A DNA stretch of 64,000 bases from Orbicella franksi (Eukaryota). Made by a program: the position numbers and the translations under genes. The number at the start of each line of letters is the position of its first letter. Position 1 is the stretch's first letter. Positions 26,331 through 63,500 of the stretch are shown here, piece after piece. Under the pieces are notes generated by a model, which saw only the letters and a program-made list of their open reading frames with translations, did not search any database and was not told where the DNA came from. Location: the NCBI GenBank assembly GCA_964199315.1, contig OZ116705.1, positions 2,976,001-3,040,000 on the forward strand, read 5' to 3'.

Positions 26331-27549
26331 TAAACAGCAGAACCTGTTGGGTACGTATTTGAAGGTTGTGAACTCAAACTGAGCGTAGAGATCCAAGGTT
26401 ACGTGATTGTGTACGTAGGGGGTGGGGTGGGGTGGGATGGGGGGGGGGGGGGTGATGGCTGGTCATGTCTGGGTGGAACAACAGAAATAAATTGAGCACA
26501 AAGCTGTGAAATAATTTCAATTGTTCGTAGAATTTGTTTATTCAACCCGACTGAATGGTTTCTTCCTATCAAGCGTTGAAACCCACACCAAATTATTCGG
26601 TGTCTGAACATCGACCAAAACAATGATTTACTCCACTTTTTATCGCAAACTAAAGCGTCAACTCATGCTTCAGTAACGTAAAAGGAGGTCAAATACACTG
26701 ATTTTATACTCACAATCTAGATCCAGCGTTTTATACCGTTTATGTTGCTCAATTTTCTAGTCAGAGAACATGATCCTTTCTTTATTTAATTTTCCTATTT
26801 ATCCTAGAAACTTGTTTTTCGCTAGCGGGTGGCAGTTTGCTGCTTTCCCGCGCTTTTGCTTTGTTACTGACAGAAACATTTCAATTATTATCGTTCTTTT
26901 CCGGTTAACAATACTATTATGGCGCCAAATACAAGTCATTTCCAGATTTAAATACCTCGTTTGAGTCGAAAAATTTAGCTTGTCAAAATCACTGACAGAT
27001 TTGCTTGTACTCGCATTAATTTTTCATGCTGTCAATTCACGCGCGAATAATTGGCGCCCTGTAGCAAGGTGGCAAAGACTCATAAACAAGGCCACTTATG
27101 AATGTAAGAACAAACATCATCAGGAAAAGATGAAGTGGAAGAGGATGACTTCTACCTTAATAATCTTTTGTACCCTTGCTCCTTGTGAATAAAGATTTCT
27201 TAAGCTCGATCGGTTGTTGCGTTTTTGGTCAAGCCCCCATGAGCCGAGAGCCTTGAATGGTTTGTGATCTGATCTTTAAATTTGTCCATGATCCGAAGTT
27301 AAAACCAAACTCCGCGACCTGTTTTGACATGACGTAATGCAATCCCCACACTCCACTGACTCTCGATTCAACGGTAGGACGGGGTTTTTCACGCTTGTTA
27401 ACTCCGGAAAAGATCTTGCCCGATATCTAGACGCAACAGTGAAGTTGCTAATTACGCAGTGGAAAATTGACACACATCCTCGGCAGAGTGAATTTTTCAC
27501 CTCGCTTAGCTCTATGGTGGCGGGCGACAGGAAATCACCATGAGGAGCT

Positions 27550-39500: not shown

Positions 39501-42500
39501 TTACAAACTGACATGCACCAATCAGGTTGCCTTTATAGTGCTCCATTCCACAATATATCATTCCGTCAAGGGCGACAAGCTGGGTTATTTACAAATCATG
39601 GAAATGCTAAAAACATTCACGAATGTTCTCAGTGGTGCTGTCAATCGAAACACTGTGACGTGGCATTCATGCTATCCAAGGACTGCTTTTTTGTACGTTG
39701 CCATAGTAACAAATCTTGTGACACATTCACAATCCATGGTTCTAAGTTTAACCCGAGGATGGTCTTCGTGAAAAAACAACGAGTTCAACTTGACGCTCAA
39801 CGCGAGAACAGTACAAGAAATACTTCAAATGGGGTAACAAATCAACCAGGTAGCTTTCAATCAAGCGAATTTATCCCAACAAGTGCAGCGATCTTCACAG
39901 TGAATAAGTCATCTGATTATTATGGGTATTTAATCTCAAGTGCTTCATTAAGTTTATCAGCAGCAGATCAACTGGCGGTACCATACGGTCCCATTGCTTC
40001 AAAAGCAGCAGGTTTGGATGTAAATTCACCTGTTGCAAGCGGTACCTCTGAGGATGACACCAGTCCCGAGGCCACACAACCTGTTCCAAAAGATGACCCA
40101 TCAAACTTCGTAGAGGTAAAAACGAACGGTTCGGAATTTTGGTGGCAGTTCTACAAGCCAGAGGGTATTAATCTAAGCAATTCAAGCTTCAAGGTCGAAT
40201 TGCCTGATGTCAGCGAAAGCACGAGAAATTATGCAGCCATTGCATCAAGTAGATCCGCTTCGCCAACGGTACGTGGTACTCATTCTCACAACCAAGAGCA
40301 AGGATTATGTAACCGCGCTAAGATTGTAAATGGAGTGACACTGACAGGAGGTTACTATGCAGGGATATTCAGCATGCAGGAAAACGTCACGAGCATGAAG
40401 CAGTGTATCTCAAGATGCTGCTGTCTATCCAAGTGCAATGTAGCTTTTATGGTCAGTAAAATTTGCTACGTGGTCCAGTGCTTCAGTAATGAGAAATGCA
40501 CTACTGTCAAAGCTCATTATGCAAGGCGATACCATCCACAGGTATCGTACGTTCGCCAAGGACCCATAGACACTTCACTGGATGAAGTCAAACATCATGT
40601 GACCGATCATGACCTCGTTACTGATAAGCTTCGTTGTGTATTGGATGACATCAGTGGGGCGAAGTACACGGTACCGAAAGGATCTGCGTTGGTGCACTCT
40701 TCAGCTCAAGATTTGGGTGATTGTGCAAAGCTCTGCTGTCAAACAAGAGGTTGTGAAGTTGCTTTAGTAGATAATGGTACTTGTTTCTCGTTGAACTGTC
40801 ATGGCAACATCACATGTCCAAACACGAACCTTTCACGTGATGAGCAATTTTTTTCACGCTCGGTAGTCGTGATAAAGGACTTGCTCCATTCACAAACGAA
40901 TTCAGAAGGCGTCGAGACCGAGGCCTGTGATTTCAGTAATGTCCTCCATGAAGTCGTGCTGCGCGGCGGCTCGCAGTCTGGAAAGTTCAAATACCTGATC
41001 GAAGTAGAAAACATGGACACTTGTATCAGAGAATGCTGCAGACATAAAGTTTGTGACCTCGCTCTCATGTTGAAGGACAACTGCTTCTTAGTGTCGTGTC
41101 ACAATGAGATGTTGTGTGACCCGATACCGTCCCGCTCCTCTGACTACCATCCCCAGATAGCCTACAAGATCAAACATGGGAAGCGACGGCATATTGGTAA
41201 GGAAGTTTCCTATTTACACTCTATTCAAACAGTGTGAGCTGTTGGACTAGGGTTTCAGTCGACGTTTTCAAGGCAGCGTTTTTTGTGTGGAGCTTTGCTG
41301 TGTATCAGAAGCTTATGCAATTCCCACTACGGTGAAATAGTTGCGACATTGATCAAAAGTAACATGATCTCGTTGTTATTCGTAATCACAAAAGATTATT
41401 CAGTCATTTCCGTAATCAATTTGGTTTTGAAGGTAGTTAAAGGTACTTAAGTCTTTCTTTCCATCCCGAGATTGTCAAACTTCGATCAAGAAACTTTTTA
41501 CTATGGTCTAATAATTTGTTTGTATTTGTTATATTTGTTTGTTTTTGTTTTTGTGTTGTGGCTTATCATTGCTTCTTTGCTCGTTTTCTTGATGCGTTTT
41601 GTTTTGAATTATGAACGAAAGTTAATAACAAAATGTTAAGGTTTCAATATCAATTTTAAGGTTGTGGTTAAGATTTCAAAGTAACCTCTGACAAGCGGGA
41701 AATTATAATAAAAACTGCTTCTTTTCCTAAACATGTACAGGTAAAAATTAAATTGTTTCTTTCTGATCAGAAAACCGGTCAAGAAGGGACAGAAAGAATT
41801 CAGCTACAACCAAGCACATACCTAAAGCTTCAAAAGATAGTAATGCAGAAAACGCTACGTTCACGATGGGTAAATTTTTCCCAGTAAGTACCGTTACAGT
41901 AAGGAACAGTCATTCCAACGAGAGTGGATTTGTTGACATAGCCAACAACAGTAAAGCTGATGAGGAGATGACTTCTAACGACACGGTGCTAGTGTCTAAT
42001 GAAACAGAAACCGACATCTTTGCCAACGAGACGACGCCGCAATACGTTCTGATGTCGCAACCATTGTTGACTTTAAACGATTCCAGGTCCGTTCTTGGGG
42101 GCAAGTCGACACTTGTCCATATGGAAAACAGTCTGAGTGTTAAGAAAACGGTGCTTCTTTCTCGGTCATTGAAAAGCAACAAAACACAGACGTTTTCAAC
42201 AGTGGCTCGGACCGCAGTAGTTGACCCAAGCGAGCTTACCAGCATAGAAATGCAATCGATGGAGAGGTTAAAGTCCTTTAAGGTGCTCTCTAACCAAACG
42301 TTTAATACAGAGGCTGCAGAAACCGTCGAGCAAACATCAAAGACCACCGAAGTGCAATTACAGTCGGCAATTTCGCAGGTTTTATCCCCTGCCCCTTTAC
42401 CTGATTCCCAGCCGGTGCTCAAATCTAGCGTTCACGTAAGTCAAGTTGAAACAAATGACTTGATTAAAACGCAGACCAGTAACGTCCAAACGGTATCCAT

Positions 42501-45500
42501 GGAGAATGGAAGCTCGTCTTTAAACTCTCAGATGTTAACGAGTTTAGGGGTATCGTCTGCTGTAACCTTAGAGAATTCCAATCAGGTGCAGACATCTCAG
42601 GTAGAAACAAGTTCTTCAGAAATAAATGAATTTTCTTCGCCAGCTCTATCGGATTTAAGTACTCCTCTTAACACTCCTGTAACCAAGCAAAAATTATCGT
42701 CAACACGAAATGGGCTTGGGCCACTTAACCTTGTTTCTTCAAATTTGTTAGTGGACCAACCTGGTCTAGCTTCCTTATCTTTGAAAGCCTCCTCCATCAG
42801 AAAAAGTAGTGGATCAGAACAAATATCGCAAACAATTCATTCTGTCCTACCCGAAATCTTCGAAACTGCTGGAATCTCTTCAAGCGTAGTTATCCTGGAT
42901 GAGAAAGAAAACCAAGCAATCCTATCGTCAGAAATCTTAGATCAATTAGAGTCAACTGCGAACGTATCGTGGGGAAGCTTCTCTTTAAGTTCAGGTGTGT
43001 CTTCGCCTACCAACGTTCTGTTTCGGAGTAGGGTAGACAGCCTTCCTCTGTCACGTTTAGAGACACCGAGCATCGCTCAAAGTAAAACAGAAAACTATCA
43101 AAGTTTCTCACTAGTCACTGGGTCGGTGCAACCCGGAACACAGACACTAAAGAAAACAGAAGGGTTCGGTCTTCAGAGCTTCATTTTGACAACGACAGAG
43201 ACTGTGTCAAGTATTAACAGTTATAGCAGGTCCAGCTCCTCTATAATTGTTACCCAAGGAAACAAAACAGTACCAGCCACTGCCACGACCATCTCCAAAA
43301 GTGAAGAGCCCAGTATGAGTGCTAATTTGCTCGATCAATCAAACGTGACGGCTCATGCAGATGAGAATTTGACTTCTCCATCTGTGCCTGGGCGATTCTC
43401 AAAGCAAAACCAAAATGTTTATCAGCGGAGAACATTTCCCTTCGTCTTGCCTACACCATCAGCAACCGTTCATGTTATTACTGAGGAGCCTGTGAATAAC
43501 AAAGCGTCTTCCTCTCTGGGCAATATACAGTCGATTGAGTTTGCAACAGTGCAGGAGGAACGAGATGAAATCCCCGCACTCACGCCAAGACTAGCAGGAC
43601 TTCCAATTTTGTCAGACGTATCTTCCATTGAGATCCATTCTTCGACTTCTTTTGTTAGTGCCAGCAGCCCTGGAGTATTCAATGAGAACAACGAGAAATC
43701 GAACGACAAGCTGATTTCTGCAAAATCAGACAGTTTTGTTGCAGTGGGATTGACGAGCCCACCATTGAAAAGGGAACCAGAGGCTGTTTTTTCAGAAAAC
43801 ATACATTCATCGACGTATTGGAGCCCAACACCGACTGCTACAACAGAGACATTCATAGCAAAGGCGTTTTCAAACCCAGAACTCGCGAACAGTGCACGAA
43901 GCGTGACACAAGTGACGTTTAAAGGTCAGAGCTCAATAAATCCCTTAATCGAAGCAGATGGAAGCGGTCTAGAAGCTGGTAGCGGTGAAAAGGCATCTCC
44001 TGTAGTGGGAGTTCAGGGTACCCGAGAAATCGATGAAGCGGATACACTTTGGCAGTCTACACAGAAAGTCTCGTCATTCAAACGGGAGGTAGCGCTGACA
44101 GTAGTAGCAAGCAGCCCATCATCGCTAGCACCATCGCAATTTTCACGTACGACACTTACACCATCTTTACAGCAGGGTGTCGTAACCAACATTGCAGCAG
44201 TAAAAACATCTACGTTATTGACACATTTTATACAGAAAAAGTCTAATGTTGAACCATCTGCCACGGAGAAGAATATCACTCAAGTGTCTGCTACTCAGGG
44301 AAAGCAGGCTGCTACTAGGAAAATTTCACAGCAAGATATTCCGGCTGAATTTTCAGTTTTACACCAAGGGGCAGCTGGTTCCTCGTCCGATGTGTCTCGT
44401 AACCAGAGTAGTGCGATATCGAAGTCCACAGAGACCAATAAGCTTTTATCTTCTGGCGTTTCACGGAAGCAATATCTCACTACACTTCCACTACAGGACT
44501 TACAAATTCAAAAGCAAATATCAAATGACGTTATTGCAGCATCAAGTACACTCAGCATTACCAAAAGTTTACAGACCTTAATGCCAGAAGAAACTTCCAG
44601 TTCAAATGCATCTTTATATAAACGGAAGACAATCCCAGAGTCAACTGATAGTTTTAAAACCTCCTCAGAGCCGTCACAGCAACAGATGATCAGTTTAGAA
44701 GGTTTGTTGAGTATTTATTCTCGTAAAACGACAACACTGTCGCTATCACACAGCAGGCCAGCAAACACTTCATCTACGGAATTTCACTCTGGGCTGGTTT
44801 CCTTTCGTTCAACTGCAACGAAGAACAGTATTGCTCTTCTCGCCGCAACTCACTCACAAGCTTCTGAGACACTTCAAGGTGTAGGAAAAATGACGCCTTC
44901 ACGCGTTTACAACGCAAATAATGAGATAAGAAAGAGCGAAGCTAGGGTACTGCTTGGAACGCCGTTTGTGCCACACAGCGTCAACACCGAGAACATTAGA
45001 AATTCCACCAAAGCCACTCCAAGTGTACTTGAACCCCAATCCAGTGGGAGGTTTGTAACGAAATCACTAACCATAGCATCGACATCTGCACTAGAAAGTC
45101 TTGAGGACACGCTGGGAAAGTTGCAGGGGAAAGAAAAAGTAGTCCGTACGCTAGCCAGTGGAATAGTTACAAGCCCTGTGTTTCACCATGCTATTCGCCA
45201 CATAGGAGATTTACTGAAGAATGAAACTGGATTAGTGCATTCGGTGTCTCGAATTGAAAGCATGTTGGGTCATCTACAGAACCTCTTAGCACGTGAAACA
45301 AGAAACCACGTGAGAAACTCGGTTAACTTTTCGTTTCCCTTGGTAGATACGGTACAGAAAGGCAATAGCTCTAACGAAATATCCAAGCAAGTAGATTCGA
45401 AACTTGATGGCATTTCAACGAAGCTAAAACGAATATCGTCAGTGCTCACTGAACTGCAGATAAAGAAAACAGAAAAAAATAGCACTATAGTTGAAAAGTC

Positions 45501-48500
45501 TCTTATAGAACGACCGGGAAATTTTACTACAGTCGACGAGAAGCACAACAGGCTTATTGAGCTCTTATTAAAGAGATTTTCTAAATTGGAAGCTGTGATT
45601 CAAAGGAATCGAGACTTTGTAAATTTCAACAGTTCTAAAACGCAAAGCATCGAATCAGTGAATGGAACCTCCGGTACAAGTGGTCGTGTCGTTCAACATA
45701 GCTCATCAAAAGGCTCAAGCAGCATAATAAAATCCAAGCAAGAAGCATCGGCCATGGTTTCATCGTCGAATGAAGCAACCTTTAGAATTTCCAGTCCAGT
45801 AACATCTCGGAGAGATCAGATATCTACGAATACTTTGCTTAGCTCCAAAGAAGTCGGCATGCATCACACGTCGACTACAATGAAATCAACTATTTCAATT
45901 TCATCAACACGGTACATGAATGATCGCAACGTTTCTCAAACCACAACAAATAGGCTGAATTTGGATTTGCTGCAGGTACCAAAAATCAGCTCGTCATCTG
46001 TTGACTTATTTACTTCACTTGTTGGTAGACCTTCGCCAAGAAACCTGATGACATCACATGACAGCGTAACGTTACTGACTGAAGTAACCAGCATTATGAA
46101 AGCAGCGTCGTCTTTGGTTCGTGCGAAGCCATCAATTGGAAATGCTGAAAACCATATTAATGTTTCAAGCACAGTTTTGAGGCCATCCGTATCTACGACT
46201 AGTTCAAGAACTGCCTCAGCTGTTGTTGGCGTCCCTCAATCAGTCAGTAGTCATCACACGTACAACAAGACACATCATGGTGAGCGTAGTGAGGAATTCA
46301 CGTTTGTGACATTTCGTAGTGGAATGGAGGCTGGTGTTTTCACCGATAGGGGCAAGGTGAAAAATATGGAGTCATGCGTAGAACGCTGCTATAACCATCC
46401 ATCGTGTCACGTGGCATTCATGGTAGGAAATAACTGTTATTCCATACACTGTTACAGTCAAAAAACGTGCGAAATTCTGCCCGTCCAGTCTCCTATAATC
46501 AGCACACGTGTTGTCTATCTCAAGGATAGAATGCTTAGATTACCATACAACACTACAACACAACCCAAAGCCTCTTCTTTAGTAACAGATGATAGGAATT
46601 TCACCATCAAGAACTGTGCCAAGAATGTAACAGTTCTCAAGAACATGACATTTCTCGCTGGAATGAGCGCTGGCAACTATACCGATTACGGAACTGTGGA
46701 TAGCATCCAGGCCTGCTCGAACATTTGCTGCTCTAAAAAAATATGCGATGCGGCGTTCATGATTCTCAATAACTGCTTTACAATCGACTGCATTAGTGAT
46801 AAAGCCTGCCATGCAATTCCATCAAGATCACATAAGGTAAACACATCCATTGTTTACTTTCGTAAGACTCTCTCTTCAGTGCGTTTTCAGCAAGTGCGCG
46901 TGGGGGTACCTGAGGCTAAGAGTCAGCCACTCTGCCCCCTTCTTAGCGGTGTTCTCAAGGGAGTTACCTTCAACGGGGGAATAAGAGCAGGCAACTTCAC
47001 TGATCATGGATTTGTCCAGGAATTCTCTTCTTGCATCGAGAAATGCTGTAGTTCGAAGACTTGTGATGTTGCGTTCATGGTCGAAAAGAATTGTTATTCC
47101 GTCAAATGTGCTGCAAACAAGAGACGCTGCCTTCCAGTAGTTGCAAGATCGAAGAAATTCAAAACGTTCATGGCTGTAAAGAAAACAGGCGACTTTCCAA
47201 AATTCTCTATTCCAGCTGGGAGCAATTCGACGTGTGCTCAAAGCGGGCCTACTCAAAACAATTTTACATTTCGTAGAGGTATCAAGGCTGGAAACTTCAC
47301 AGGTCGTGGTCAAGTAAAGAACATGGACAGTTGCATTCAGAAATGTTGTAGCAGTCCTTCATGCAGTGCTGCTTTCATGATAGGAAAACACTGTTACTCA
47401 GTCGTATGCTCCTCCGCGAAAGACTGCGAGACAGTGCTGGCAAAGAAGACAAACCTCATTACGTCTATTGCTTTTGTGAATAGAGAGAGGGGGAAGGACA
47501 AAGCTGAAGAAATTGAGTCAAATCAACGAACGACTTTTACAAGAAGCATTCTAGGGGGCCATTGCGATGTCACTGATGTGCAGCATAATGTAAATATTAC
47601 TGGAGGATGGAGAGCAGGAAAATTTCTCCGAATTTCTGATATCAAGGACATGAAAAAATGCACGGAAGCTTGCTGCGATTATCATGGATGTGGTGCTGCC
47701 ATGTTCATCGATAAATACTGCTACAACTTAATCTGTTTTAAGCAGCGAGGCTGTCAGCTGATTGGGTCAAAAGAGGCCTTTATGATTGACAAATTTGTCG
47801 CGGTACGCAAGAACGTGGGCCATGTCCTGTCACCTTTCAAGAAAGCGCAAATTGCTACGCTCACTGCGTTTAAAGAGCATATGAATCACTCCTCGTTCAA
47901 GCAAGAAGTCCGCAACGCAAACAAAATTCGAAACCGATCGACGATTTTTAACTTGGAGACACCTGAGAAGACAAGAAATGGGGATGACCTACACAAACTG
48001 TCACGCTCCGTGATGCAATCTCTATCCATCCAGCCCACACGTACGCGCTTTTTAACCAAAAGCGAAGGTCTTGATAAAACAGTTTTCAATTCAAACGCCA
48101 AGAAACATGAAATTCCCTTCTATATCTCTTCAAAAGTTAAAGACCGCTCTCTGATTCCGTCATTGTTGAGGACACCTCATTCTCATATAAAATCATCCGC
48201 TGCAAGTTTGCAAGATAGCCCAAGCATCGCAGTTAGAAATACGTCATCTATCTCCGTTACAAAGCAGCTGACCAACGTTCAAGATAAGACGCAAAGTGTA
48301 GGCACGTTAAAGATCTCAAACTCTAAGACATTATCACCGCTAATAACAGACACTCCTGCCATGTTTAATCCTTCTTCATCCACGAGCAAAGAATATAAGT
48401 TGCCAAGGCAGTCACTCAGTTTGGACACGCCATTCACAACTTCCAGCAATTTTACAGAAGAAGTTTCTGTTTCTAGCGCAAGTTCTGCGATTAGTGACGA

Positions 48501-51500
48501 TGGAATCAACGTAACTGCAGTGCCACAAGAGGGGTACTCATTCAAGAGCGATTATAGTCTACTAAAGGGAAAGGCTAATCACAAAACAAAAAGGACATAC
48601 GCCTGTACCCATACGTTTGTCTTTAACAATGCAACTTTACGCGGTGGACTCAAAGCTGGAGATGTCAAGAATGAGGGTAAAGTGGAAGGAATGGAGGAAT
48701 GCGTTGAGATGTGTTGCAAAACACCAGAATGTAACGTGGCGCTGCTGTTGAAGGAGAACTGCTATATTGTGGCCTGCTTTAACAAAGAGAGCTGCGAGGC
48801 CGTCCCTTCTAAGCAAACGAAAGGCAGAACGAAAGTCGCGTATGTCGCGCGCAGTAAGGACGAAACAGAACTGATTAAACAACTTATCAGTCACACAGAA
48901 ACATCAAAAACTAACGTGTCAAGCGCCAATAGAACTAAAGATGGCAAACCAACAGGAAACAAAGATTTTCAACCTGCAGATGTTGCTATTAGACAAGGAT
49001 CGTGCTTTAGAAGCCCCATTTTGCGCGACGTTCGTTTTAAGCTTGGCAGACACGCTGGCGATTTCAAATCAGTTGGTTTAGTAAGGAATGTTGACCGATG
49101 TGTAGCGTTATGCTGCAAGGAACGTGCGTGTAACGCAATCTTCATGTTGGGATCACGTTGTCATCTGGTTTCCTGTTCTAATGAGCAAGATTGCCAGACT
49201 GTTGAGGCAAAGTCGAAGTTTTACAAGCCCACGGTGGTTTATTTAGCGAGGTCCAAGGTCGAAGTAGCATACTTTTTCAAGCTGATTTCAAAGGAGGCGC
49301 TCGGGAAATATCAAGACAACATGACTCTTGCTGTGAACGCGTCAACTGATGAGGATGAGTCAGCAATACGCAGATCACAACTGGAACGCCCAGAGTGGAA
49401 TACAAGCGTCGGTGTGTCGTATTCGCAAAGGAGTAATGTAAACGTCACCGCAGCATCTGAACCTTCAAATGCCTTTACTACTCTGGAGAACGTTACGCCA
49501 TCACTGAGCAGCATGAGTGTTCCAGTAATACCACAGTCTACACCGCAATCATCAAATATCGTCTCCCCTCCGGAAACAATGGCGGTGGTGTTAAGTAGTA
49601 CGAATGTCACAGCACCAGTAGCAGCAATTCCACGACTGGATTCATCAATTGCTGCCACTACTATGAAAATCGTACCACCATTAGCCAGTGTAGAGGTTAC
49701 AGCAAACCTTAAGCCAGCACTGGAATCTTCAAATGCCTTCCCTCTTCCTAAAGAACTCTCAAGATCATTTAGTATTTTGAATGTTACACACACGTTGACA
49801 TCATCAACAACGCTAACGACACCAAAAGTCTTTTCATCTCCACAAGAACATAGGTTATCACTTTATCAGCATGGTGTGGCAACGTCAAACTCAAACACGA
49901 AATCTGTTACAACGTCGCTTTTAAATGCTTCACGTTCTCCTGTTCTTCCATCTAATGTTACTAACATGCCTTTGAAGCCATTAACGATCACTACCATAGA
50001 GAGACGTGGAAACGAGAGCAGTGAACCGAAGACTCACACCAGGTCTGGGCTATCAGCAAAACACTATTTGTCACAGGAGAACGCGATAGAAGAGAAACCT
50101 ACTATGGCTAACACAACTGCAACTCCTACTCCTGGTGTGAAATCCTCCATTCAAGCACAGTTAAAAATGGTAGTGACAGACATCACGAAATCAACAGATA
50201 CCGTAAGTCAGCTTAGAGAATCTATAACACGACTGAATATAAGTCGAATAAAATCCCCAGTGGCTCAATTTGAGGCCAGTAAGATTCGGTCATCTGCAAG
50301 ATTAACGCCAAAGATCTCAAGTGTACAGGAGACCCTTGAGCGCAGCAGATCAGACGAGACAATCGCAACAGTACACTTTGCAAAGAAAGAAGATGTGGAT
50401 ATAATGATAACGAAAGTAGATAAGATATCTTCAACTAATCCGCGTGCTAGTTCTGTTTTTGGCTCAAATTATGATTATTCTACGGCAAATTTTGCCGCCT
50501 CGCATCCAACGCCAGCCCCAGCAAGAACAGAAGTTGAAACCTTTCCCGCGAGTCTTGCTCGACACGGGTCCACGGTTTCTCTGCAAAGCGGCTTACGAAC
50601 CTTAACAGCTGCTCATCAACAAAATGGAAATATCAATGAATCCTGGCGCCACATATCTCAAGCTGACAGCACAACAATGGTTGATACCTCAGACGTACCA
50701 TCTGGAAAACTACATACCAATTCGAGTGTCTCTATCATCGTACACAGCAACAAATCCAGTGATGTAACTTCTATCGAGAACAAGGCGTCCGGCATAGAAC
50801 CAACAAGACGGCACTTTGTCAACGAGCACAAGAGGGGTGACATTGCAATGTTGAGGAACTCAGCGTTTCAGAAATCTCCCGGGATACTATCACATTTACT
50901 GATTCCGTCTTCATTTGTGTCTCAAATCAATGCTACACCTGGAACGGGTAAACAGCAAGTAATGACAGTGAATCAACCCAAGCTCGCAAATCTGAAAAGT
51001 GTGTTCCAATCATCTATATTGCCGATAAGTAACAATAGTGAGAACACGTCAATGGCACAGACATTACTGCCGGGAGCCTCAGACAGTAAAGGTATGGTGA
51101 CGACTAGATCCACATTGAATGGACCCCACTACATTCAACCGTCACCCACCACCAGAGGGAGAAGAAGTTCTTCAACGAGCGAGTTATTGTTAAGGGAATC
51201 TCCCTCTATAGGGCTCAGGGCTCAGAGAATTTCAACATCAGCTGTCCCTCTTTTGACATCTTCAGAGGTTTTGTTTTCTTCAATCCCCATTCAAAGATCA
51301 TTTACTCACATGATATCATCTAGTCGTGGCGCTGAGGTATACCCCACACCTGCAAGTCACACCCTTGAAATAACGAGAACCAAATCAGCGTACGCACCAT
51401 CCTCTACACGGCGAATAAATGCTACAACTATTTCATCTTTGCTAGCATTGGTATTAGGGGGCATGAAGACACCTTTGCCAGCGTCATCAATCCAATCAGT

Positions 51501-54500: not shown

Positions 54501-57500
54501 TGTTGCTTTTATGCTTTTAAGCCGCTGTTTTTCAGTCTCTTGTTACAATGAGACTTCTTGCAATAGTATTCCGGCGCGAGGTTTAATTTTCCAGCCTCAG
54601 TTGGCCTATTTAAGAAGAAATGATACTTCAAGAAGTACATTGAACAATCATTTCGCAACAGTTGCAATTTCTAAAACACAAACTTCGGTCATGGTGTTCT
54701 CTTCATCGAGTGAACTAGGAGGAACGGAAAGCAAAAAAAGCTTGGCTCGTTTCCATGACAACTGTCGCTATAGTAACTCGGAGATTCACGTAACCCTTCG
54801 AGGAGGACTGAACGCAGGATCATTTTTGGACTCTGGTGTAGTTGATAACATTACGGAATGCGTCGATAACTGTTGCCAGGCGACCAAATGTGACGTTGCC
54901 TTCATGATCGTGAAGAGATGTTTTTTGGTAACGTGCTATAGTTCCAGCCTGTGTCAGAGCATTCCTGCGCGAAATTCCGGCTACTTCACCGAGATTGTGC
55001 ACATAGCACGAGACGAGAACGCTGTTGTTCGAGATCTTCTAGCAAGACTCGTGCAATCATCGTCGCCGCCTGTCAAGATGAAAAGCGTTGTTTCAAGTTC
55101 GGTGGAAACCTCCACATTCCGTGTTAACCTTCTCAACTCCAGTAGCTCGCTATTTCTCAATAGCACCACAGGTGGCTCCATAAGTAAACTCTTGACACTG
55201 AGTGGCCATTTTACTGGTTTCTACAGCGGATCAAGTTTGCCCTCAAGGCCACCCGCTGTACCTGCTTTTAGGGCGGTAATCAAATCTGCGATTGCACCGC
55301 TAAACGTCAACAAACAAGGAATAGTTGGACTGATTCAAACGATAGGTATGTCAACACGTCCATTGAGCACTCGTCATGTACTCGATCAGAACATTACGCC
55401 ATCTTCAGTGAAGCTTAATTCACCATCAAGCTCGCAATGGCCTGAAACTGTCGGAGATGGAAATATACAAGGAAAACAACTGGAAACTGTAGAGTTTTCG
55501 AAAGATGAAACATGTCAAAGCACAGCTGTTTTTTACAATGCAACCATGCGTGGAGGAATTAATGCTGGCGTTTTCAAGGACCAAGGGACCGTGCAAAATA
55601 TGCGGAAATGTATTGAGCAATGTTGCCGATGGCAGTTCTGTAGTGTAGCGTTTATGCTTTTGACTCGTTGTTATATAATTGCCTGCTACAATGATCACTT
55701 GTGCGATCCTGTTACAGCCAGAAATGTGACTTTCACACCTCGCATTGCTTTTGTTTCTCGTGTGCGGAGAGATCATGGCAATTTGAGTAGAATTTTAGAA
55801 AACATCCCAACACCTACCTTGTCAGTCTACCAGAAGTCACACCTTAAAACATCAACAGGAGGGACAAATTTCACAACAGCCAAAGTTTATTCAAACAAGG
55901 CATTATTCCCGTCTACATTGACTAACGCAGCACCACAGCTGCCAAGTTCGCTGGCAATTAAACCTTCGCCATCTCAATCGTCGTTTTCTAAAGTGTTTTC
56001 GTCTCGACCTGTATTGCGTCATAATTGCACCAACAGCGAACAAAAACACAATGTAACATTTCGCGGCGGGCTAAGTGCAGGGCATTTCAAAGACAGGGGT
56101 AAAGTCGCCGATATGGAAAAGTGTGTCGACTTTTGTTGCAAAGAAGACCATTGTGATGTTGCGCTGATGCTTTTGGAAAACTGTTTTACGGTCATCTGTC
56201 ACAACAAACGCCTTTGTGAGAGCGTACCTGCCAAGACTGGACGGTACAAGTCAAGAATAGTTTACGTTGGGAAGAATCGTAGTGATAAATCCACCCAGCT
56301 GGTAACGCATAAATTAACAAAGACAATCTCCTTACTAGATGCCGCTTTGCCGGCTATGGGAGAAAATAATGAAACTGAGACTTGGCAAAATAGAAAGAAA
56401 ACCACTGTCTCTGAGAGAACTCGTAGTTTTGAGTCTCAACAACTTACGCAACTCTTATCTTCTCCACCGTTTGAGGAGGTCGACCAATCGAGTAACATCT
56501 CGAAGATAGAAAATTTGACTTCTACCGAACATTCCACAAATCAAAGTGAAACAAATAAAGAACATGAGAGTTTGATACTTCAAAAAAAATTACATAAAAA
56601 CGCAAAAACTAAAACATTTGACGCTACGGCGTCACAACGCAAACAACATCACCTGATTTCAGCATCTGTATCATCAGGTCATAACACTAGCTTGCTATTT
56701 TCGTCAACCATAAGGCTGAACGCAAGCGTCTGGGCTCTTCCTGAGCCAGGTAAATCGGCCATAAAAAGGGGTGGAAAGTCAGGACACAAATCTGGGCTAA
56801 CGTCGACTTTTACGAACCCCTCACAACACTCATTTCCTCAACCTTCCTCTTGTCTCAGCAGCCCGATCTCTTACAATGTTACGCTACGCAACGGTATCCG
56901 ATCGGGCTATTTTAGAGACCAGGGGAGGGTTGAGAATAATGGCGCGTGTATACAAAAGTGCTGCGGCGCTGAGGACTGTGATGTGGCTTTCTTGCTCAAG
57001 CAAAGGTGCTACCTCGTCACGTGCTACACTAAGAAGGGATGCGAGACAGTTCCAGCCAGACACAGCTTATTCAGACCACGTGTTTCTCACGTGCAGCGGA
57101 CCAATGTTTCCCAACTGATGTCGTTCATGGACGAGCAGGATGATGCTTATTCATCTGGGAAGACAGCTTCTATCCAGTCTCGCAGCAGTACTCGAACTCA
57201 TTTTATTACACCGTCTTCGACCCTCCCCGCTCCAGTTAACTCACTTGATAGTAGTAGTATACATAAAACAGAAACAAAGGCGTCACCAACTCACAAGGCA
57301 CAGGCATCTCCAGCTCACCACAGTGGAACGAAACATCACAAACTAAAGACTGATAAAAATAAACACAGATCTGGTAACCTAGAAACGCAAAAGAGGTCGC
57401 AGCACGTGACAGTAGCACCTGAGCTAAAGAAGAGGAAATCGATGAAGTCAACAAAGAGTCGACGCGCCAGACATAAACCTAAACCAAAGGAGACAAAGAG

Positions 57501-60500
57501 TGAATCATCAAGAGCCAAAATGCAACATTTTCAGTTACAAATGGTGGAGAAAAAAGATCAGAAATTGTCTCATAGTGACTTGAATCAGTTATTCCATCTT
57601 ATGAAGCCCACGAAACGAGTGAACAATGCTCACAGCATGTCAGATGTTGGACCACAGGAGACGAATTCTGACAGCTTAAAAAAGACAACACAACCAGACA
57701 AAATATCCCTCAAGGACGGAGCTATAGCGTCATCGTTTAACTTTCCAACAGTTATAACGACGGCCCCAACTCCTTCCGCTTCGAAACAGGACAGTTCTCG
57801 AAAAGCAGTGGCTGCAGGTTTTGACCATAGGACATCTAAAAAGAAAAACGAAGCTACTAGTTTACACAGAAAGTCATCTGCGTCCACTCACAAAGGAGCG
57901 ACTAAGCAGCGTACTAGGCCTTCTTTGGCAGCAACAAAGCCACATTCAAGAAGTCACAAGTCTCAAACCACAGTAACAGGTCGTCTTGATTTTGCTTCCC
58001 AAGTTAAGGCTCTTCTTGAAAAAGAAGGCGACAATAAGGAACATTTTGAACAAACCAAAAAGGCAAAGTTTAGCCGAAAGACAACGACTAAGCAAAAAGC
58101 TACTTTTATGAACACTAAAGAATTTCACGATTACACTACAACATCAACTACGTCACGTCTAACAGCACCAACCCGAACAAGGTTACGTTTAAATACACCG
58201 CGGCAACCTACTGTACTGCCACCGAAAGTTTCATCGCATCGTGGAAGTAAATTCCGTGAAACGAAATCAACTGTACCCTCCTTGCCGACACAAGTTCCCG
58301 ATCTTCGGGTCTCAAGTTGTGCAACAGGCCATGTGGAATGTAATCAAACATTACGGGGTGGGTTGTCTTCAGGTTTGTTTCATGAGGTAGGCAAAGTGAC
58401 AGATATTCGGGGATGCTCACAGCACTGTTGTTCCAGTCCCATATGTGATTTAGCCTTCATGGTACTGAACCACTGCTTTTTGGTCACCTGTTCAAGTTCC
58501 AATCCTCACATGTGCGATAGCACGCCAGCCTTGGCTACGAACTTTAATCCGATGATCTCTCGTGTATCGCGAAGTGGGAGCAAAGACAATAAAGATCAGC
58601 CGATGAAAACTGCGTCGGACAGAAACAACAAACCAACCCCCACTGTAAAGCCACTTGCAACACCACCTAAGTTGCCAAGGCAACCAGAAATGGAAGCGCC
58701 GGTACCTGCTAGTAACGTAACCAACCAGTCAACTGCCGAGAATCAAGCAAATTCATCTACGTCACCTGCTAACTCGTCACGGAGACACCCTGAAGCTAAA
58801 GAGAGTGGTGCAATGCCTGTTTCTGCATCTGAAATGCTACCATCCCCTCCAGGCTGCATTTCCTCTTTAACGGAGCACAATGTTACACTAAGAGGGGGTC
58901 TTCATGCCGGAAAATTCACAGACGCGGGTAAAGTGGACGGGTCTTACACTTGTACCGAGCTGTGTTGCAAGGCAGATAACTGTGATGTAGCATTTTTCGC
59001 TTTTCATCGCTGTTTCCTTGTCAACTGTTTCGATGAGTACCTTTGTACTTCCACGCCCTCGTTGCTGCCGAACTTCAATCCAACTCTGGTTCACGTGTAC
59101 CGCCATCATTCAAAACCAACGCCAAAGCCATCAACGACTTTACCACCAATCAACTATGTGTTGCAGCAAATCGAAGATGAAACGAAAACAAAATCAAATA
59201 GCAAGAATAAAACTTGTGCCCATTCTGAAGTTTATGAAGAAGTCACGCTTAGGAAAGGCTACAAAGCTGGAAAGTTCACCTCTCATGGTAAAATCAATTC
59301 TACAGATCAGTGCGTCGACTTCTGTTGTAGACAGTCTGGTTGTGACTTGATTTTCATGTTTCTAAACAACTGTTTCACAGTTTCCTGTTCCAGTGGAGTC
59401 GCGTGCGAAATCGTATCAGCGAGACAATCCAGGTTTAAACCTAGGGTTGTTTATTTGATTAAAAATAACTCCACCAAGCTGATTAAACCATCAGAATTGA
59501 ATTCTTCTCTCTCTGATCCGAAATCTTTCGTCGGAAAGCAGCCTGTGAATGCCGTGCATTATAAGGAACTGCTATCGGATAAGAATAATGGGGGATCGTA
59601 CAAGAAGGACTTCAGCCAAATGAGCAATGACACCGAAACAATAGATGAAGAGTTCACGGAAGTTCCTGATAACAAAATAACGTCGCGCACTGTCATCAAT
59701 ACGGCGGGAAAAGTTAACTCACAACATCTGAAACACAACGTTAGCGAACGTATCGTGGGAAAAGAGCCTTTACATACCTTGCAAAATAAGGTGTTGCGAC
59801 TGAGTGAGAGAAATCAAGAATCTTACAAAAAGAACTTCACCCAAATGAACAATGATACCGAAACAGTGGATGAAGAATTTACGAAAGTTCCTGGCAACAA
59901 AATAACGTCTCGCACTGTAATCAATTCTGCGGTAAACGCTAGCTCACAGCGTCAAAAACACAACATTAGTAACAATTTAATTGCTAAATCCGATATTAAA
60001 ACTACAAAACAACGCTTCAAGGACAACCATCAACCGAAACTTGAAAGTGGTGAAATGACCAATCACAAGGAAAGCAGAACAGACGAAAAGATGGACCTTG
60101 TGTTGAATAAACTAACCAACGTCACAGAAGAGAATAAACGCCTTGAAGGAGAGCTTCACGTTGTTATGGCCAAACAGAATAAGCGCCGTCATAAAAGTAG
60201 AGTAACATCCTCAGTTCCGGCTAGAGGAGAGCGTATGAAAGAGAAGTCACAGTCTTCAAAGAGTATTGAAAATAAACGGATTAAGTATAAAGAGAGGCGA
60301 AGAATGGGTAGGTTAGGATTCAGTGGTGACGGATCCGGAATGGACTCCTCAGCTCGGAAAAGGGTAGTCATTGTGGATACAGACAGACCTCCAGTGTTTC
60401 CGCCAACAGATGAGCATAACATCGAGGAACACAGTATACATGCATTCCGGAGGAAAACGTATCAAAAAGATCATCACTTGAGAAAATCTGGAAAGGTGAC

Positions 60501-63500
60501 ACCAGAGCAACGACCCCTAAAAAAGCAGCGTAACAATACAAAGACAGGATTAAAACACTGGGATCCGACAAATGAACACGATATCGAGGAACATTCTATT
60601 TATAGCATCAGCGATGTATCGGAAAGCAGGAGCGAATCGATGAAAAACCCGCACGTTAAGGTGGGAGAAGGTTCGGAGGTCAAGTACGGACAACCCGAAG
60701 AAGACACAGATGATCTCGAATTGAACGACATTCTGAAGCTGAAACCAAACAATAAGCATGCAAGGAGACCAGAGGAACCAGTGTGGATAAGTTCCAGTGA
60801 TGAAAACAAAGACGACAGGGAAAGCTTCCATGAACAAATACCTCCTACTCAAAAATGGCATTTCAAGTTTAATGACCGAACAAACAAGGAGCATACCAAT
60901 GAGGATGAATTCCACATTGAACATCAAGATAAATCAATTGCAAGGTTGGCTGATAAAAACGTTTGGATGAACACAAGAAATGAAGATATAGATCATAAGG
61001 AAAGTTTCCATGAAGAAATATTTCCAACACATAAAGCGCACTTCCAGTTGGATAGCCAGAAAGGCCTCGGACATACCAGTGAGGATGAATTCCACGTTAA
61101 ACATCAATATAACTCTAAGTTGGCTGATAAACATGTTTGGATTAACACAAGAAATGAAGATATCGATAACATGGAAAGTTTCCATGACCAAATAGCTCCA
61201 ACACACAAATCGCATTTCCAGCTGGATGGCCAGAGAGGCCTCGAACATGCCAGTGAGGAAGAGTTCCACATCCATGATCCAACTTCGCCTGCAAAACATA
61301 TGTGGATGAGCTCGACGAATAAAAACAAAGACCGTTTGGAAAACTTTGATGAACAAATAGCTCCAACTCACAGATCCCATTTCCAGTTGGACAAACAGAA
61401 AGAGAGGATGAGAGAGGATGAATTCGACATTGATGGCAACGATAAGTCAGAGGATTCCGAAAGCCATGTCTGGGTTAGTTCGAGAGACAGAAATGAAGAC
61501 CATTTGGGAAGCTTTCATGATCAAATAGCTCCCACCCATAAATCCAATTTTCAATTTGAGAACCAGAGAATTAACAAAAATTCCAGAGAGGACAAACGGC
61601 ACAAAGAACAACAAGATAAGCCAGATGTGTCTCAACAGCATGTGTGGAAGAGTACTAGGAATAGAAATGAAGATCGCCTAAAAAGCTTTGATGACCAAAT
61701 AGCTTCTACTCATAAATCCACCTTCCAGTTGGATAAACAGCGAGAAAACCAGAATACCAAAGAGGATGACTTCGACATTGAAACCCATTATAGACCAGAG
61801 GAACCCCAAAGGCATACATCGATTGGTTCGCGAAATAAGAATGAAGACCAGCCGGGAAGCTTTAATGAACAAGTAGCTCCTACTCATATATCGCATTTCC
61901 AGTTAGATAAATCGGGAGATAACTATCATTCTAACGACTACGATTTTCATCTTGAAGACAACGTTGAGCCGCAAGATTCTGAGAAACATGTGGGGGAAAG
62001 TTCGAGAAATCGAAGCAAAGATCACATGGAAATGGTAAACGTTCCTGAACCAACTGTGCCTTCTCATACATCTAGATTCCAATTTGATAATCAGGGGAAG
62101 ACCAAGCATATCAACAGAGATGAATTTCACATTAAACAGCAACACAAACCATCTGTACATGAAGTGGCTGGCGCTGAGCCAAAAGACCAACATGACAACG
62201 AGCGCCCGGAAATGTTGTCTCAAAATGTCTCAAAGGAGCCTGAAACTGACTTCACAATGTCGAACTCCTCTGAGCCTGCTTTGTCAGAGTTTGTCGAGTC
62301 AGAAAAGAACACTGGGACATCTCAAGTGGGGCATGGTGCTGAGGGACCTGTTTTTGCGAAGGAAGACTTTGCTAAAGGACATAAAAGGGTACCACATGAT
62401 CATAACGATGGTAGCAATAGCAAGCCAATTGAGGAGATGGCTTTGACGGAAAAACCCTTAGATATTTCTACCTCCTCATCTGTGACCGAGCACACAGGAA
62501 ATGGGCATAAAACATTGACTCTTCCCGATCGAAAGCAAGAAAACAATAGTCATGAAAAACCAGACCTCGACGCGATCTATAACAAAATAAACAACATCTA
62601 CAATCGCCTGCAGGATCTTTTTGACGCACAGTCTCGAAGAGAACGAAATACGACCCGTTCCTCTCGTAAAACACGAGGAAGGCTGGATGGAGTAAGCGAA
62701 AACTCAAAGAGGCGTGAAGAAGGTATACCGACGCCCCCAGTGTCATCCCTGAGGCCTACAACTCTTCCTTCCAGGTTAACACCACCAACAAAGAGAGTAC
62801 GAGTTGTCAAACAGTTTGTAACTGATGACTTTGGAGGCTCTGGTGTGCCGCCACATCGCCATCGAGATGCCCTCATGGATTACATTAAAACCATTTATAA
62901 TCGTGTGCAGGAGTTATACAAAAGGAAGCTGAAGACTCCACCTCCTAGCAAAAGAAGAAAGTTTCATCATGTTTTTGCCTCAAGGGACGACAGAAAACAA
63001 AGGAAAACCAGTAAGGGGAGAAGTCACACGAGGAAAGCGAAAAATTACCATCGTAAGAAAGTTGAAGAGGAAGCAGTCTTGAAAGAGATGAAGCGGATAT
63101 ATAAAAATATGAAGGAAATGTACCATCAGCAACGGAAAGCGCAGAAGAAAGCCAAAATTATCGCTCAAACCTCTGAAGGACAACATCAACGGTCATACAT
63201 TCCTTCACGTTATGGTGCTCGTGAAAGTGATGGTCGAACAGCTCCAACTGTGGAGAGTGCGAAACCGACAGGCCTGGTGGAGACTCTCGAGAGGCCAATT
63301 TCACTGACCAGTAGTATCGTAGGAGCTCGAGTTAAACCACAAGTTCATAAGACCGGTAAGTACCCGTCGTGCATTGTCTGATTTGATAGTCAAACAATTA
63401 AATGTGAAAGAAACGTGTGGTTTTTACGACAGGTTGCTACGTCTGACAAATTTATTTAAGATATCTCTGAAGGCTGTATTGCATAAAAAGGTGAATACGA

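What the first reader, a model, noticed from the sequence alone, without database searches (positions are those of the whole stretch)
41771..63355. Single 21,585-nt internal coding exon without DNA-level tandem arrays
Seen: good acceptor (ttctgatcag|) and donor (|gtaagt) with 7,194 full codons and no stop. Known: this is in the size range of the largest coding exons described (MUC16, titin, AHNAK), which are often repeat-driven. Here the spacers are mostly unique sequence and the modules are highly diverged, so a collapsed or expanded assembly artefact is unlikely. This implies old intra-exonic duplication that has been kept in frame.
Basis: partly seen in the sequence, partly recalled or inferred. 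Interest (0 to 1): 0.72.

Follow-up and report, generated by a model that had tools for sequence, protein, structure and literature searches.

The report
Real 21.6-kb coral coding exon
A stony-coral gene for a giant membrane-anchored glycoprotein carries a real, expressed and evolutionarily conserved single coding exon of 21,585 bases, about as long as the largest human exon; it is a striking example of a known kind of thing, not a new mechanism.

Summary
Window 41771-63355 is one open stretch of 2 nt + 7,194 codons + 1 nt with no stop, where about 414 stops are expected by chance (P~1e-185).

- **Splice sites.** Both sites are phase 1. The donor is shown in RNA: spliced contigs from two RNA runs cover 57.9-63.35 kb without a gap and join 63355 to 63732, and intron depth is zero. 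The acceptor is supported only by gene models in two other coral genera, which place an intron at the same position.
- **Content.** The exon encodes 16 MANSC/MANEC (PAN/apple-fold) cysteine modules. Ser/Thr-rich, cysteine-free spacers full of N-glycosylation sequons separate them.
- **Gene.** It is roughly the eighth exon of a ~51-kb gene. The predicted product is a ~11,800-aa type-I membrane protein with 33 MANSC modules, 2 laminin-G-like domains, EGF_CA domains, one Ig domain and a TM segment.
- **Conservation.** Thirty uninterrupted orthologous ORFs (6,139-7,666 aa, 98-38% identical) keep exactly 16 modules at near-fixed spacing. Each module has a 1:1 orthologue. dN/dS is 0.14-0.24 in modules and 0.44-0.46 in spacers, and every indel is in frame.

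The duplications are therefore ancient and the frame is under selection; this is not an assembly artefact. RNA continuity over 41.8-52.7 kb, the mode of origin and the function remain untested. Public annotations split this exon into several genes.

The parts
27130..27183 (+). Putative first coding exon (MKWKRMTSTLIIFCTLAP..., signal-peptide-like), phase-1 donor CCTT|gtgaat
   Evidence: Sequence reading only. It is in phase with the acceptor tcacag|GT at 27722. Not tested with RNA. A UBA-domain exon on the minus strand at 24857-25435 bounds the gene on its 5' side.
27722..35757 (+). Four to five small upstream exons, four of which carry one MANSC module each (modules at 27832-27960, 30618-30860, 32586-32777, 35476-35715)
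   Evidence: Pfam KIAA0319_N/MANEC hits and my own HMM. Exact exon ends were not determined.
36381..41196 (+). Second large exon (open frame from 36381; about 1,600 codons) with 7 MANSC modules, ending ATTG|gtaagg (phase 1)
   Evidence: Oculina and Desmophyllum models align up to 41195 and continue at 41770 with consecutive residues.
41197..41770 (+). Upstream intron, 574 nt, GT..AG
   Evidence: It has stops in all frames.
41771..63355 (+). The giant exon: 21,585 nt, phase 1-1, 7,194 complete codons
   Evidence: open frame; RNA; conservation.
41771..46284 (+). Spacer 1 (about 1,500 aa, Ser/Thr-rich, no Cys) with two conserved islands: 41866-42102 (near-invariant acidic segment) and 45073-45672 (conserved helices)
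   Evidence: AF2 of the second island gives helices only, pLDDT 54. No Pfam match.
46285..47796 (+). MANSC modules M1-M5 (46285-46521, 46624-46857, 46945-47172, 47239-47478, 47563-47796)
48604..49245 (+). MANSC modules M6-M7 (48604-48846, 49003-49245)
49246..53952 (+). Spacer 2 (about 1,570 aa), fast-evolving, open in all orthologues; its length varies 1,264-1,894 aa (M7 to M8 start distance)
   Evidence: RNA runs hold 33-62% of the words of 43900-53899.
53953..57093 (+). MANSC modules M8-M13 (53953-54195, 54370-54612, 54763-55005, 55513-55755, 56026-56268, 56851-57093)
   Evidence: AF2 model of M11 has pLDDT 96.6; the top PDB match is 2MSX, the HAI-1 MANEC domain.
58318..59457 (+). MANSC modules M14-M16 (58318-58563, 58855-59097, 59215-59457)
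59528..59969 (+). Two-copy 225-nt duplication (76% identical), lineage-specific: least conserved part of the exon
60775..62150 (+). Degenerate array of about 8 copies of a ~57-aa His/acidic unit (period 174 nt)
62473..63355 (+). Conserved C-terminal part of the exon: three 'IYNRxQxLY'-type helices and an acidic GGSG motif
63356..63731 (+). Downstream intron, 376 nt, GT..AG, removed in RNA
   Evidence: joint 63354/5 to 63731/2 in contigs of two RNA runs and in one raw read; zero depth at 63501-63700.
63732..64000 (+). Start of the next exon (continues beyond the window). The gene runs on to about window-equivalent 77,900, through Laminin_G_3 x2, MANSC x6, EGF_CA, I-set Ig and a TM segment.
   Evidence: loci L004, L005.

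Best explanation
Window 41771-63355 is a real internal coding exon of 21,585 nt. As far as it could be tested it is included whole, and it makes up about 60% of the coding sequence of a ~51-kb stony-coral gene.

**Protein (inferred from sequence).** The predicted product is a type-I membrane glycoprotein of about 11,800 aa. In order it has a signal-peptide-like start, 33 MANSC/MANEC modules (PAN/apple fold, disulphide-rich), two laminin-G-like domains, calcium-binding EGF domains, one Ig domain, a transmembrane helix and a short tail. Sixteen of the modules lie in this exon. They are separated by cysteine-free, Ser/Thr-rich, N-glycosylation-rich spacers that are probably disordered.

**Shown.**
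- The frame is open and is held open by selection across many coral lineages.
- Module number, order and spacing are fixed.
- The 3' 5.4 kb is continuous in spliced mRNA, and the donor is used.

**Inferred.**
- Splicing is probably unproblematic because the flanking introns are short (574 and 376 nt), so the introns rather than the exon are recognised.
- The protein probably acts like a membrane-tethered mucin or proteoglycan: a very long glycosylated stalk at the cell surface or in the pericellular matrix, presenting many PAN-type binding modules at set distances.
- The modules arose by ancient duplication before the sampled coral lineages split, and have since evolved independently without homogenisation.
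For: **Open frame.**
- There is no stop in 7,194 codons against about 414 expected.

**RNA.**
- 14 RNA runs hold 51-82% of the words of 53900-59500 and 33-62% of the words of 43900-53899.
- RNA contigs of 15,361 nt (X1) and 6,515 nt (X7, polyA) lie on 57901/58091-63354 with no gap and are spliced from 63355 to 63732.
- Raw polyA reads (X23) cover 29 of 30 bins, with zero depth in the intron bin, no internal joints and no loose ends.

**Acceptor.**
- Two annotated models (Oculina P0067, Desmophyllum P0068) pass from 41195 to 41770 at consecutive residues.
- All three junctions are phase 1.

**Domains.**
- Pfam KIAA0319_N scores 1e-58 to 1e-69 and MANEC up to 5e-30.
- A profile of the modules hits 2MSX at 5.6e-4.
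- The AF2 module model has pLDDT 96.6, and its best PDB match is the 2MSX MANEC domain (TM 0.71), followed by PAN/apple domains.
- Downstream exons carry Laminin_G_3, MANSC, EGF_CA and I-set domains and a TM segment.

**Conservation.**
- All 30 orthologous ORFs have 16 modules.
- Modules are 74-95% identical to their orthologues with no gaps; spacers are 29-80% identical.
- Module orthology is 1:1.
- dN/dS is 0.14-0.24 in modules and 0.44-0.46 in spacers, with in-frame indels only.
- Inter-module distances have a CV of 1-3%.

**Composition and splicing context.**
- Spacers are 15% Ser, 9.5% Thr, 5.6% Pro and about 0% Cys, and the exon has 131 N-X-S/T sequons.
- Large exons flanked by short introns are efficiently spliced in human (PMC3467050, section 22, heading only).
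Against: - Reads could be laid only on 57.9-63.9 kb. For 43.9-57.9 kb there is only the share of 31-mers in RNA assemblies, and for 41.77-43.9 kb there is no RNA evidence at all.
- The acceptor is supported only by other species' gene models, which may be ab initio.
- Oculina RefSeq/GenBank models start inside the exon, at the equivalent of 53470. This could mean an internal start rather than a split annotation.
- Raw-read depth was low (117 reads) and one polyA run had none.
- No proteomic, localisation or glycosylation data exist, so the mucin- or proteoglycan-like function is inference from composition and domain content.
- The combined Ser/Thr/Pro content (30%) is lower than in classical mucin domains (my own knowledge).
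Confidence: 0.8

Rival explanations
1. The exon is real, but it is not always used whole. In-frame internal splicing (exitrons), or an internal transcription start near 53.4 kb, produces shorter isoforms that make up a large share of the transcripts.
For: - Oculina models XP_078381845/6 begin at the equivalent of 53470, inside the exon.
- RNA word share is lower for 43.9-53.9 kb (33-62%) than for 53.9-59.5 kb (51-82%). In the polyA run X7 it falls from 0.74 to 0.33.
- No reads could be laid on the 5' half.
Against: - The whole frame is kept open in every lineage, with spacer dN/dS of about 0.45 and only in-frame indels. The 5' half must therefore be translated in some important isoform.
- The X1 RNA contig runs 5,157 nt beyond the 5' end of the laid stretch, so probably back to about 52.7 kb, upstream of 53470.
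- The lower 5' share fits the 3' bias of polyA libraries on an mRNA of more than 35 kb.
- The Oculina models are the submitter's models (the same sequence carries both a KAL and an XP accession). A neighbouring model, G032462, covers the start of the exon, which looks like a split annotation.
- There are no joints or loose ends in the 5.4 kb tested.
Confidence: 0.15
2. Origin rival: the giant exon did not grow by duplication inside an exon. It arose by loss of the introns between many one-module exons (for example by recombination with a reverse-transcribed mRNA), and some linkers later expanded.
For: - Paralogous multi-MANSC genes in the same genome (C8:6.27-6.30 Mb with about 20 modules; C7:9.74-9.75 Mb with 9) have one module per exon, in open frames of 108-423 aa, mostly 110-190. 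So do the flanking modules of this gene.
- All determined junctions are phase 1, as expected for shuffled module exons.
- M1-M5 are spaced 98-113 aa apart, the size of a typical one-module exon.
Against: - In a tree of 58 modules, most modules of the two big exons group together, along with a few paralogue modules. This suggests duplication within this gene, but branch support was not examined and 80-aa domains resolve poorly.
- No orthologue with introns inside the region was found: all 30 ORFs are uninterrupted. The event, whatever it was, therefore predates all sampled taxa.
Confidence: 0.35
3. The long open frame is an assembly artefact, a pseudogene or a non-coding stretch that is open by chance or because of its composition.
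For: None found. Ser/Thr-rich low-complexity sequence can lower stop frequency slightly.
Against: - P(no stop) is about 1e-185, and the other five frames have 249-536 stops.
- Other assemblies give the same ORF.
- Spliced RNA is present.
- dN/dS is below 1 throughout.
Confidence: 0.01

Closest known systems
Human MUC16 exon 3 (more than 21,000 nt; largest human internal exon per PMC3467050) and other membrane-tethered mucins
   Same: It is an internal coding exon of about 21.6 kb encoding mostly Ser/Thr-rich, heavily glycosylatable, probably disordered sequence of a type-I membrane protein. The giant exon holds most of the coding sequence.
   Different: - Sixteen folded cysteine modules are embedded inside the exon.
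- No SEA domain or VNTR was found.
- Ser/Thr/Pro is 30% rather than the higher values typical of mucin domains (my own knowledge).
- There is no sequence homology to MUC16.
- The flanking introns are very short.
MANSC/MANEC domain proteins (HAI-1/SPINT1, LRP11, MANSC1, KIAA0319 and KIAA0319L; Pfam PF07502 and PF23597; structure 2MSX)
   Same: The repeated module is a true MANSC/MANEC domain by HMM score, cysteine pattern and predicted PAN/apple fold. It sits in an extracellular, membrane-anchored protein.
   Different: - The named vertebrate members carry a single N-terminal MANSC domain (my own knowledge); this protein has 33.
- PKD, Kunitz and LDLa domains are absent.
- It is not an orthologue of any of them.
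Titin and AHNAK giant exons
   Same: Exons of more than 17 kb that encode many copies of a module within one exon.
   Different: Those are intracellular proteins with recognisably similar repeats. Here the modules are 36% identical, the protein is extracellular, and 82% of the exon is unique spacer.
Paralogous multi-MANSC genes of the same genome (G000:C8:6270494-6303107, C7:9738646-9753372)
   Same: They have the same module family in long arrays, and the modules are of similar divergence.
   Different: They have one module per small exon and no giant exon or long spacers. Their full architecture was not studied.

Membership tests
MANSC/MANEC domain (PF07502) / KIAA0319_N (PF23597) | Match to the family HMM above the curated threshold | tested here: met
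   KIAA0319_N scores 193.5 and 230.4 bits (cut-off 27) with 7 + 9 stretches. MANEC scores 61.5 and 104.1 bits (cut-off 25.5).
MANSC/MANEC domain (PF07502) / KIAA0319_N (PF23597) | Conserved set of seven or eight cysteines in about 80 residues | tested here: met
   In 24 modules, C33, C37, C43, C53, C58 and C64 are invariant and C38 is nearly invariant. A first Cys is present in most modules.
MANSC/MANEC domain (PF07502) / KIAA0319_N (PF23597) | PAN/apple-type fold as in the solved HAI-1 MANEC domain (2MSX) | tested here: met
   The AF2 model has pLDDT 96.6. The best Foldseek PDB match is 2MSX (TMq 0.71, prob 1.00, E 0.015), followed by HGF N, plasminogen PAN and factor XI apple domains. The profile against PDB sequences gives 2MSX at E 5.6e-4.
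MANSC/MANEC domain (PF07502) / KIAA0319_N (PF23597) | Extracellular part of a secreted or membrane protein | tested here: inconclusive
   A TM-like segment lies in the last exon found, together with EGF_CA and Ig domains, and exon 1 looks like a signal peptide. All of this was read from sequence; no predictor or experiment was used.
KIAA0319 / KIAA0319L orthologue | One MANSC domain followed by five PKD domains, a Cys-rich region and a TM segment | tested here: not met
   No PKD domain was found in any exon searched, and there are 33 MANSC modules.
Membrane-tethered mucin (MUC16-like) | Pro/Thr/Ser-dominated domain, usually with tandem repeats | tested here: not met
   Spacers are 15.1% S, 9.5% T and 5.6% P. 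Only one degenerate array of about 1.4 kb is present.
Membrane-tethered mucin (MUC16-like) | SEA domain(s) next to the membrane | tested here: not met
   No SEA match was found in the Pfam scans of the exon or of the downstream exons tested. Not every downstream exon was scanned.
Membrane-tethered mucin (MUC16-like) | Dense O-glycosylation | not testable with these tools
   Composition only.
Giant internal coding exon (more than 10 kb) | Both splice sites used, so that the exon is internal | tested here: met
   The donor is shown by spliced RNA contigs and one read. The acceptor is supported by phase and by two orthologous gene models but not by RNA directly.
Giant internal coding exon (more than 10 kb) | Whole length present in mature mRNA | tested here: inconclusive
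   This is shown for 57.9-63.35 kb. Word shares of 0.33-0.82 cover 43.9-59.5 kb. 41.77-43.9 kb was not tested.
Giant internal coding exon (more than 10 kb) | Translated: frame under selection | tested here: met
   dN/dS is 0.14-0.46, indels are in frame, and the ORF is open in 34 other contigs.

The most novel reading that the evidence does not exclude
The exon family (18.4-23.0 kb of uninterrupted frame in the sampled corals; the longest ORF, P0006, has 7,666 codons) may contain the longest internal coding exons on record.

Its module count, order and spacing are frozen: distance CV is 1-3% while linker sequence drifts to about 30% identity. This could mean that the protein works as a length-calibrated tether or ruler. 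One candidate is a giant coral transmembrane proteoglycan. Conserved acidic SG/SGxG motifs at 41.9, 60.3 and 62.9 kb would be its glycosaminoglycan attachment sites. It would set the thickness of a pericellular layer or anchor tissue to the skeleton.
Probability: 0.2. Interest if true: 0.6.

Novelty: new member of a known kind. Interest (0 to 1): 0.42.

Why it matters
- **Exon size.** A coding exon as large as the largest human one exists in an early-branching animal, and it has stayed a single exon in every coral assembly sampled here. Giant exons are therefore neither a vertebrate peculiarity nor necessarily driven by repeats.
- **Annotation.** Public coral annotations break this exon into several 'hypothetical proteins' (Oculina G032462 and G032464, Desmophyllum OS493_034671). 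As a result, a ~11,800-aa surface protein with 33 MANSC modules is missing from coral gene catalogues, proteome databases and expression tables.
- **Selection on disordered spacers.** The contrast between strongly constrained modules and spacing and fast-evolving but always-open spacers gives a clean natural case for studying this.
- **Function of MANSC.** The function of MANSC domains is itself poorly known.

Tried and rejected
- **The look-up of encoding contigs.** Four metagenome contigs were used instead.
- **Raw-read run X21.** No read lay on the stretch, so it gave no test.
- **Literature.** A search for MANSC together with coral or cnidarian terms found nothing relevant.
- **Single-sequence PDB search.** One module gave only E = 0.19 to 2MSX; the profile and the fold search were needed.
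- **Conserved island 45040-45672.** AF2 gave low confidence (pLDDT 54, helices only), so no fold is claimed. Pfam finds nothing significant in the five non-module islands or the repeat array.
- **Spacer 1 against spacer 2.** The similarity is 67 bits against 47 +/- 7 (maximum 64) for block shuffles. This is marginal and is treated as compositional.
- **Module tree with paralogues.** It is too poorly resolved to decide between intra-exon duplication and intron loss.
- **Oculina.** No ORF-type hit is its own sequence (the best is 71%). Whether the Oculina exon is continuous therefore could not be checked.
- **Sampled variants.** In the 40 listed RNA/DNA differences there were 18 synonymous, 22 non-synonymous and no stops. 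This is consistent with the other results but too few to use alone.
- **Rejected readings.** A terminal exon ending at the stop 63379-63381 is refuted by the spliced RNA. Assembly collapse or expansion and a chance ORF are also rejected.

Full report
**1. Observation**

The window is G000:C8:2976001-3040000 of a 497-Mb coral genome. The interval 41771-63355 is 21,585 nt. Read from 41773 it gives 7,194 codons without a stop, while the other two forward frames hold 392 and 536 stops. The stop-to-stop open frame is 41767-63378, 7,204 codons. From base composition about 414 stops are expected (log10 P = -185), and the five other frames carry 249-536 stops.

The borders are ttctgatcag|AAAACC and ACCG|gtaagt. 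The exon starts with two bases that complete a codon and ends with one spare base, so it is phase 1 at both ends.

Tandem Repeats Finder and a blastn self-comparison find only two repeats. One is a degenerate 174-nt-period array at about 60.78-62.14 kb, with copies 64-69% identical and the best pair 83%. The other is a two-copy 225-nt duplication at 59528-59969. Apart from one 122-nt match between modules M9 and M11 (71%), the remaining ~92% has no DNA-level repeat.

**2. What the exon encodes**

Pfam finds 16 copies of the MANSC/MANEC module. KIAA0319_N (PF23597) scores 193 and 230 bits for the two halves, and MANEC (PF07502) scores 61 and 104 bits. An HMM built from the window places the copies in groups of 5 + 2 + 6 + 3.

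The copies share a fixed cysteine framework but are only 20-52% identical in protein (median 36%) and 38-61% in DNA (median 48%). An AlphaFold2 model of one module is confident (pLDDT 96.6). Its best PDB match is the solved MANEC domain of HAI-1 (2MSX, TM 0.71), followed by PAN/apple domains of HGF, plasminogen and factor XI. A profile of the modules also finds 2MSX by sequence (E 5.6e-4).

The other 82% of the exon (5,911 residues) is spacer. It is 15% Ser, 9.5% Thr and 5.6% Pro. Its only three cysteines sit just upstream of the M2-M4 envelopes (probably those modules' first Cys). The exon as a whole has 131 N-X-S/T sequons, 110 of them in the spacers.

**3. The gene around it**

Upstream on the same strand lie:
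- a second large exon (open frame 36381-41234, ending at the donor ATTG|gtaagg after 41196) with seven modules;
- four small exons with one module each;
- a possible first exon at 27130 with a signal-peptide-like start, read from sequence only.

Downstream I fetched 40 kb more. The Oculina patagonica model XP_078381846 aligns without interruption to 53470-63354. It then continues at about 63730 through exons that carry two Laminin_G_3 domains, six more MANSC modules, EGF_CA domains, an I-set Ig domain and a hydrophobic membrane segment at about window-equivalent 77.7-77.9 kb.

The gene therefore spans about 51 kb, has 33 MANSC modules and encodes roughly 11,800 aa. That length is my estimate from exon sums. 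The giant exon supplies about 60% of it. The flanking introns are short, at 574 and 376 nt.

**4. Is it expressed, and are the splice sites used?**

- Fourteen runs recorded as RNA, from several studies, hold 51-82% of the sampled 31-mers of 53900-59500.
- They hold 33-62% of those of 43900-53899.

- A 15,361-nt contig of RNA run X1 lies on 57901-63354 with no gap. A 6,515-nt contig of the polyA run X7 lies on 58091-63354 likewise.
- Both jump from 63354/5 to 63731/2 (GT..AG, 376 nt skipped).
- Raw polyA reads of X23 cover 29 of 30 bins. The intron bin is empty, one read crosses the joint, and there are no internal joints, loose ends or pile-ups of ends.
- The empty intron shows that these RNA assemblies are spliced mRNA rather than contaminating DNA.
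- The X1 contig extends 5,157 nt beyond the 5' end of the stretch. If it is colinear, it reaches about 52.7 kb.

The rival reading, a terminal exon ending at the stop eight codons past the donor, is therefore refuted.

The acceptor was not tested with RNA. However, annotated proteins of Oculina (P0067) and Desmophyllum pertusum (P0068) align up to 41195 and resume at 41770 at consecutive residues, and the phases match.

**5. Conservation**

A search with the exon's translation returned 30 proteins of 6,139-7,666 aa from ENA, Logan and JGI assemblies. They appear to be plain ORF calls, because most of them end by reading a few codons into the downstream intron, like '...GKYPSCIV' here. Each is therefore an uninterrupted frame.

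- **Module layout.** All 30 have exactly 16 modules in the same 5 + 2 + 6 + 3 layout.
- **Identity.** Against 12 of them, modules are 74-95% identical with no gaps. Spacers are 29-80% identical with up to 24% gaps.
- **Module orthology.** In a tree of modules from eight taxa, each of M1-M16 forms its own clade (support 0.92-1.0). All duplications therefore predate these lineages, and there has been no homogenisation since.
- **Spacing.** Distances between successive modules are almost invariant (CV 1-3% for linkers of 98-347 aa). The three long spacers vary by 11-12%.
- **Selection.** Four metagenome contigs with orthologous DNA are open from the contig start to the same exon end. By Nei-Gojobori, dN/dS is 0.14-0.24 in modules and 0.44-0.46 in spacers. 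There are 21-24 indel events per about 3,000 codons at dS of about 0.25-0.3, all in frame.

A stretch that was always spliced out would not stay open under that much divergence.

Inside the 'spacers' there are four conserved islands without any Pfam match: 41866-42102, 45073-45672, 60073-60672 and 62473-63354. One was folded and gave only low-confidence helices.

**6. How it most likely works**

*Shown:* the exon is a selected, expressed, internal coding exon.

*Inferred:*
- With introns of 574 and 376 nt on either side, the spliceosome can pair sites across the introns, so exon length need not matter. In human, large exons flanked by small introns are spliced efficiently (PMC3467050).
- The product resembles a membrane-tethered mucin or proteoglycan: a long glycosylated stalk carrying many PAN-type binding modules at set distances. 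From general knowledge, PAN/apple domains bind proteins or carbohydrates.
- Conserved acidic SG/SGxG motifs in three islands could be glycosaminoglycan attachment sites.

None of these three inferences was tested here.

**7. Origin**

Whether the duplication happened inside an exon is open. Two paralogous multi-MANSC genes in the same genome have one module per small exon, as do the flanking modules here. M1-M5 are spaced like fused one-module exons.

A 58-module tree groups most big-exon modules together but is poorly resolved. I put intron loss at about 0.35.

**8. Comparison with what is known, and novelty**

The module is a true MANSC/MANEC domain. The protein is not an orthologue of KIAA0319 (no PKD domains) and does not meet the mucin criteria tested (no SEA domain, no VNTR, Ser/Thr/Pro only 30%).

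The largest human internal exon is MUC16 exon 3, at more than 21,000 nt, and titin's largest exceeds 17,000 nt (PMC3467050). This exon matches MUC16's, and some orthologous frames are longer (7,666 codons, P0006).

No paper in the searchable library links MANSC arrays with corals. Public annotations split the exon among several models.

I rate it a new member of a known kind: a giant exon of a membrane-tethered glycoprotein. It is well documented and of moderate interest.

**9. Limits**

- Reads could be laid on only 6 kb.
- There is no RNA evidence for 41.77-43.9 kb.
- Taxon names of most orthologues are hidden.
- Function is inferred.
I confirm the repeat but did not study it further.

Noticed in passing
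G000:C8:6270494-6303107 (-) (loci L012-L015) and G000:C7:9738646-9753372 (-) (L016-L019): Two further multi-MANSC genes, with about 20 and 9 modules, each module in its own small exon. Smaller clusters lie on C2 (29.1 Mb), C15 (4.38 Mb, three modules in one 512-aa frame) and C10 (30.69-30.75 Mb). The MANSC family is expanded in this coral.
   Followed up: partly
window 41866-42102, 45073-45672, 60073-60672, 62473-63354: Four conserved islands lie inside the otherwise fast-evolving spacers, with no Pfam match. They include a near-invariant acidic stretch, conserved amphipathic helices and three 'IYNRxQxLY' motifs. They also carry acidic SG/SGxG motifs that look like glycosaminoglycan attachment sites.
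   Followed up: partly
window 46285-59457: Distances between successive MANSC modules are almost constant over 31 orthologous frames (CV 1-3%), although the linker sequences diverge. Length seems more constrained than sequence.
   Followed up: yes
G000:C8:3058291-3059769 (+) (L020:291-1769), about 18 kb beyond the window end: A single open frame of 493 aa with Mab-21 nucleotidyltransferase and Mab-21_C domains (cGAS-like) lies about 4 kb downstream of the giant gene's membrane exon.
   Followed up: partly
window 24857-25435 (-) and 22142-22786 (-): There is a UBA-domain exon of another gene on the minus strand, and a weak endonuclease/exonuclease/phosphatase match that may be a LINE remnant. 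Together they bound the giant gene on its 5' side.
   Followed up: partly
window-equivalent 94871-98928 (-) (L007 and beyond): Long minus-strand open frames (622 and 512 aa) have retrotransposon-like gag/RT/integrase-type sequence, judged by eye only.
   Followed up: no
window 63356-63381: The first about 24 nt of the downstream intron read on in frame to a stop ('KYPSCIV*'). This tail is similar in many orthologues. Retaining the intron would give a truncated protein without the membrane anchor, but no retention was seen in the reads laid.
   Followed up: partly
public annotations (P0067, P0032/P0031, P0068): The Oculina patagonica and Desmophyllum pertusum annotations split this exon into separate 'hypothetical protein' genes. 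The RefSeq Oculina models start in the middle of the exon.
   Followed up: partly
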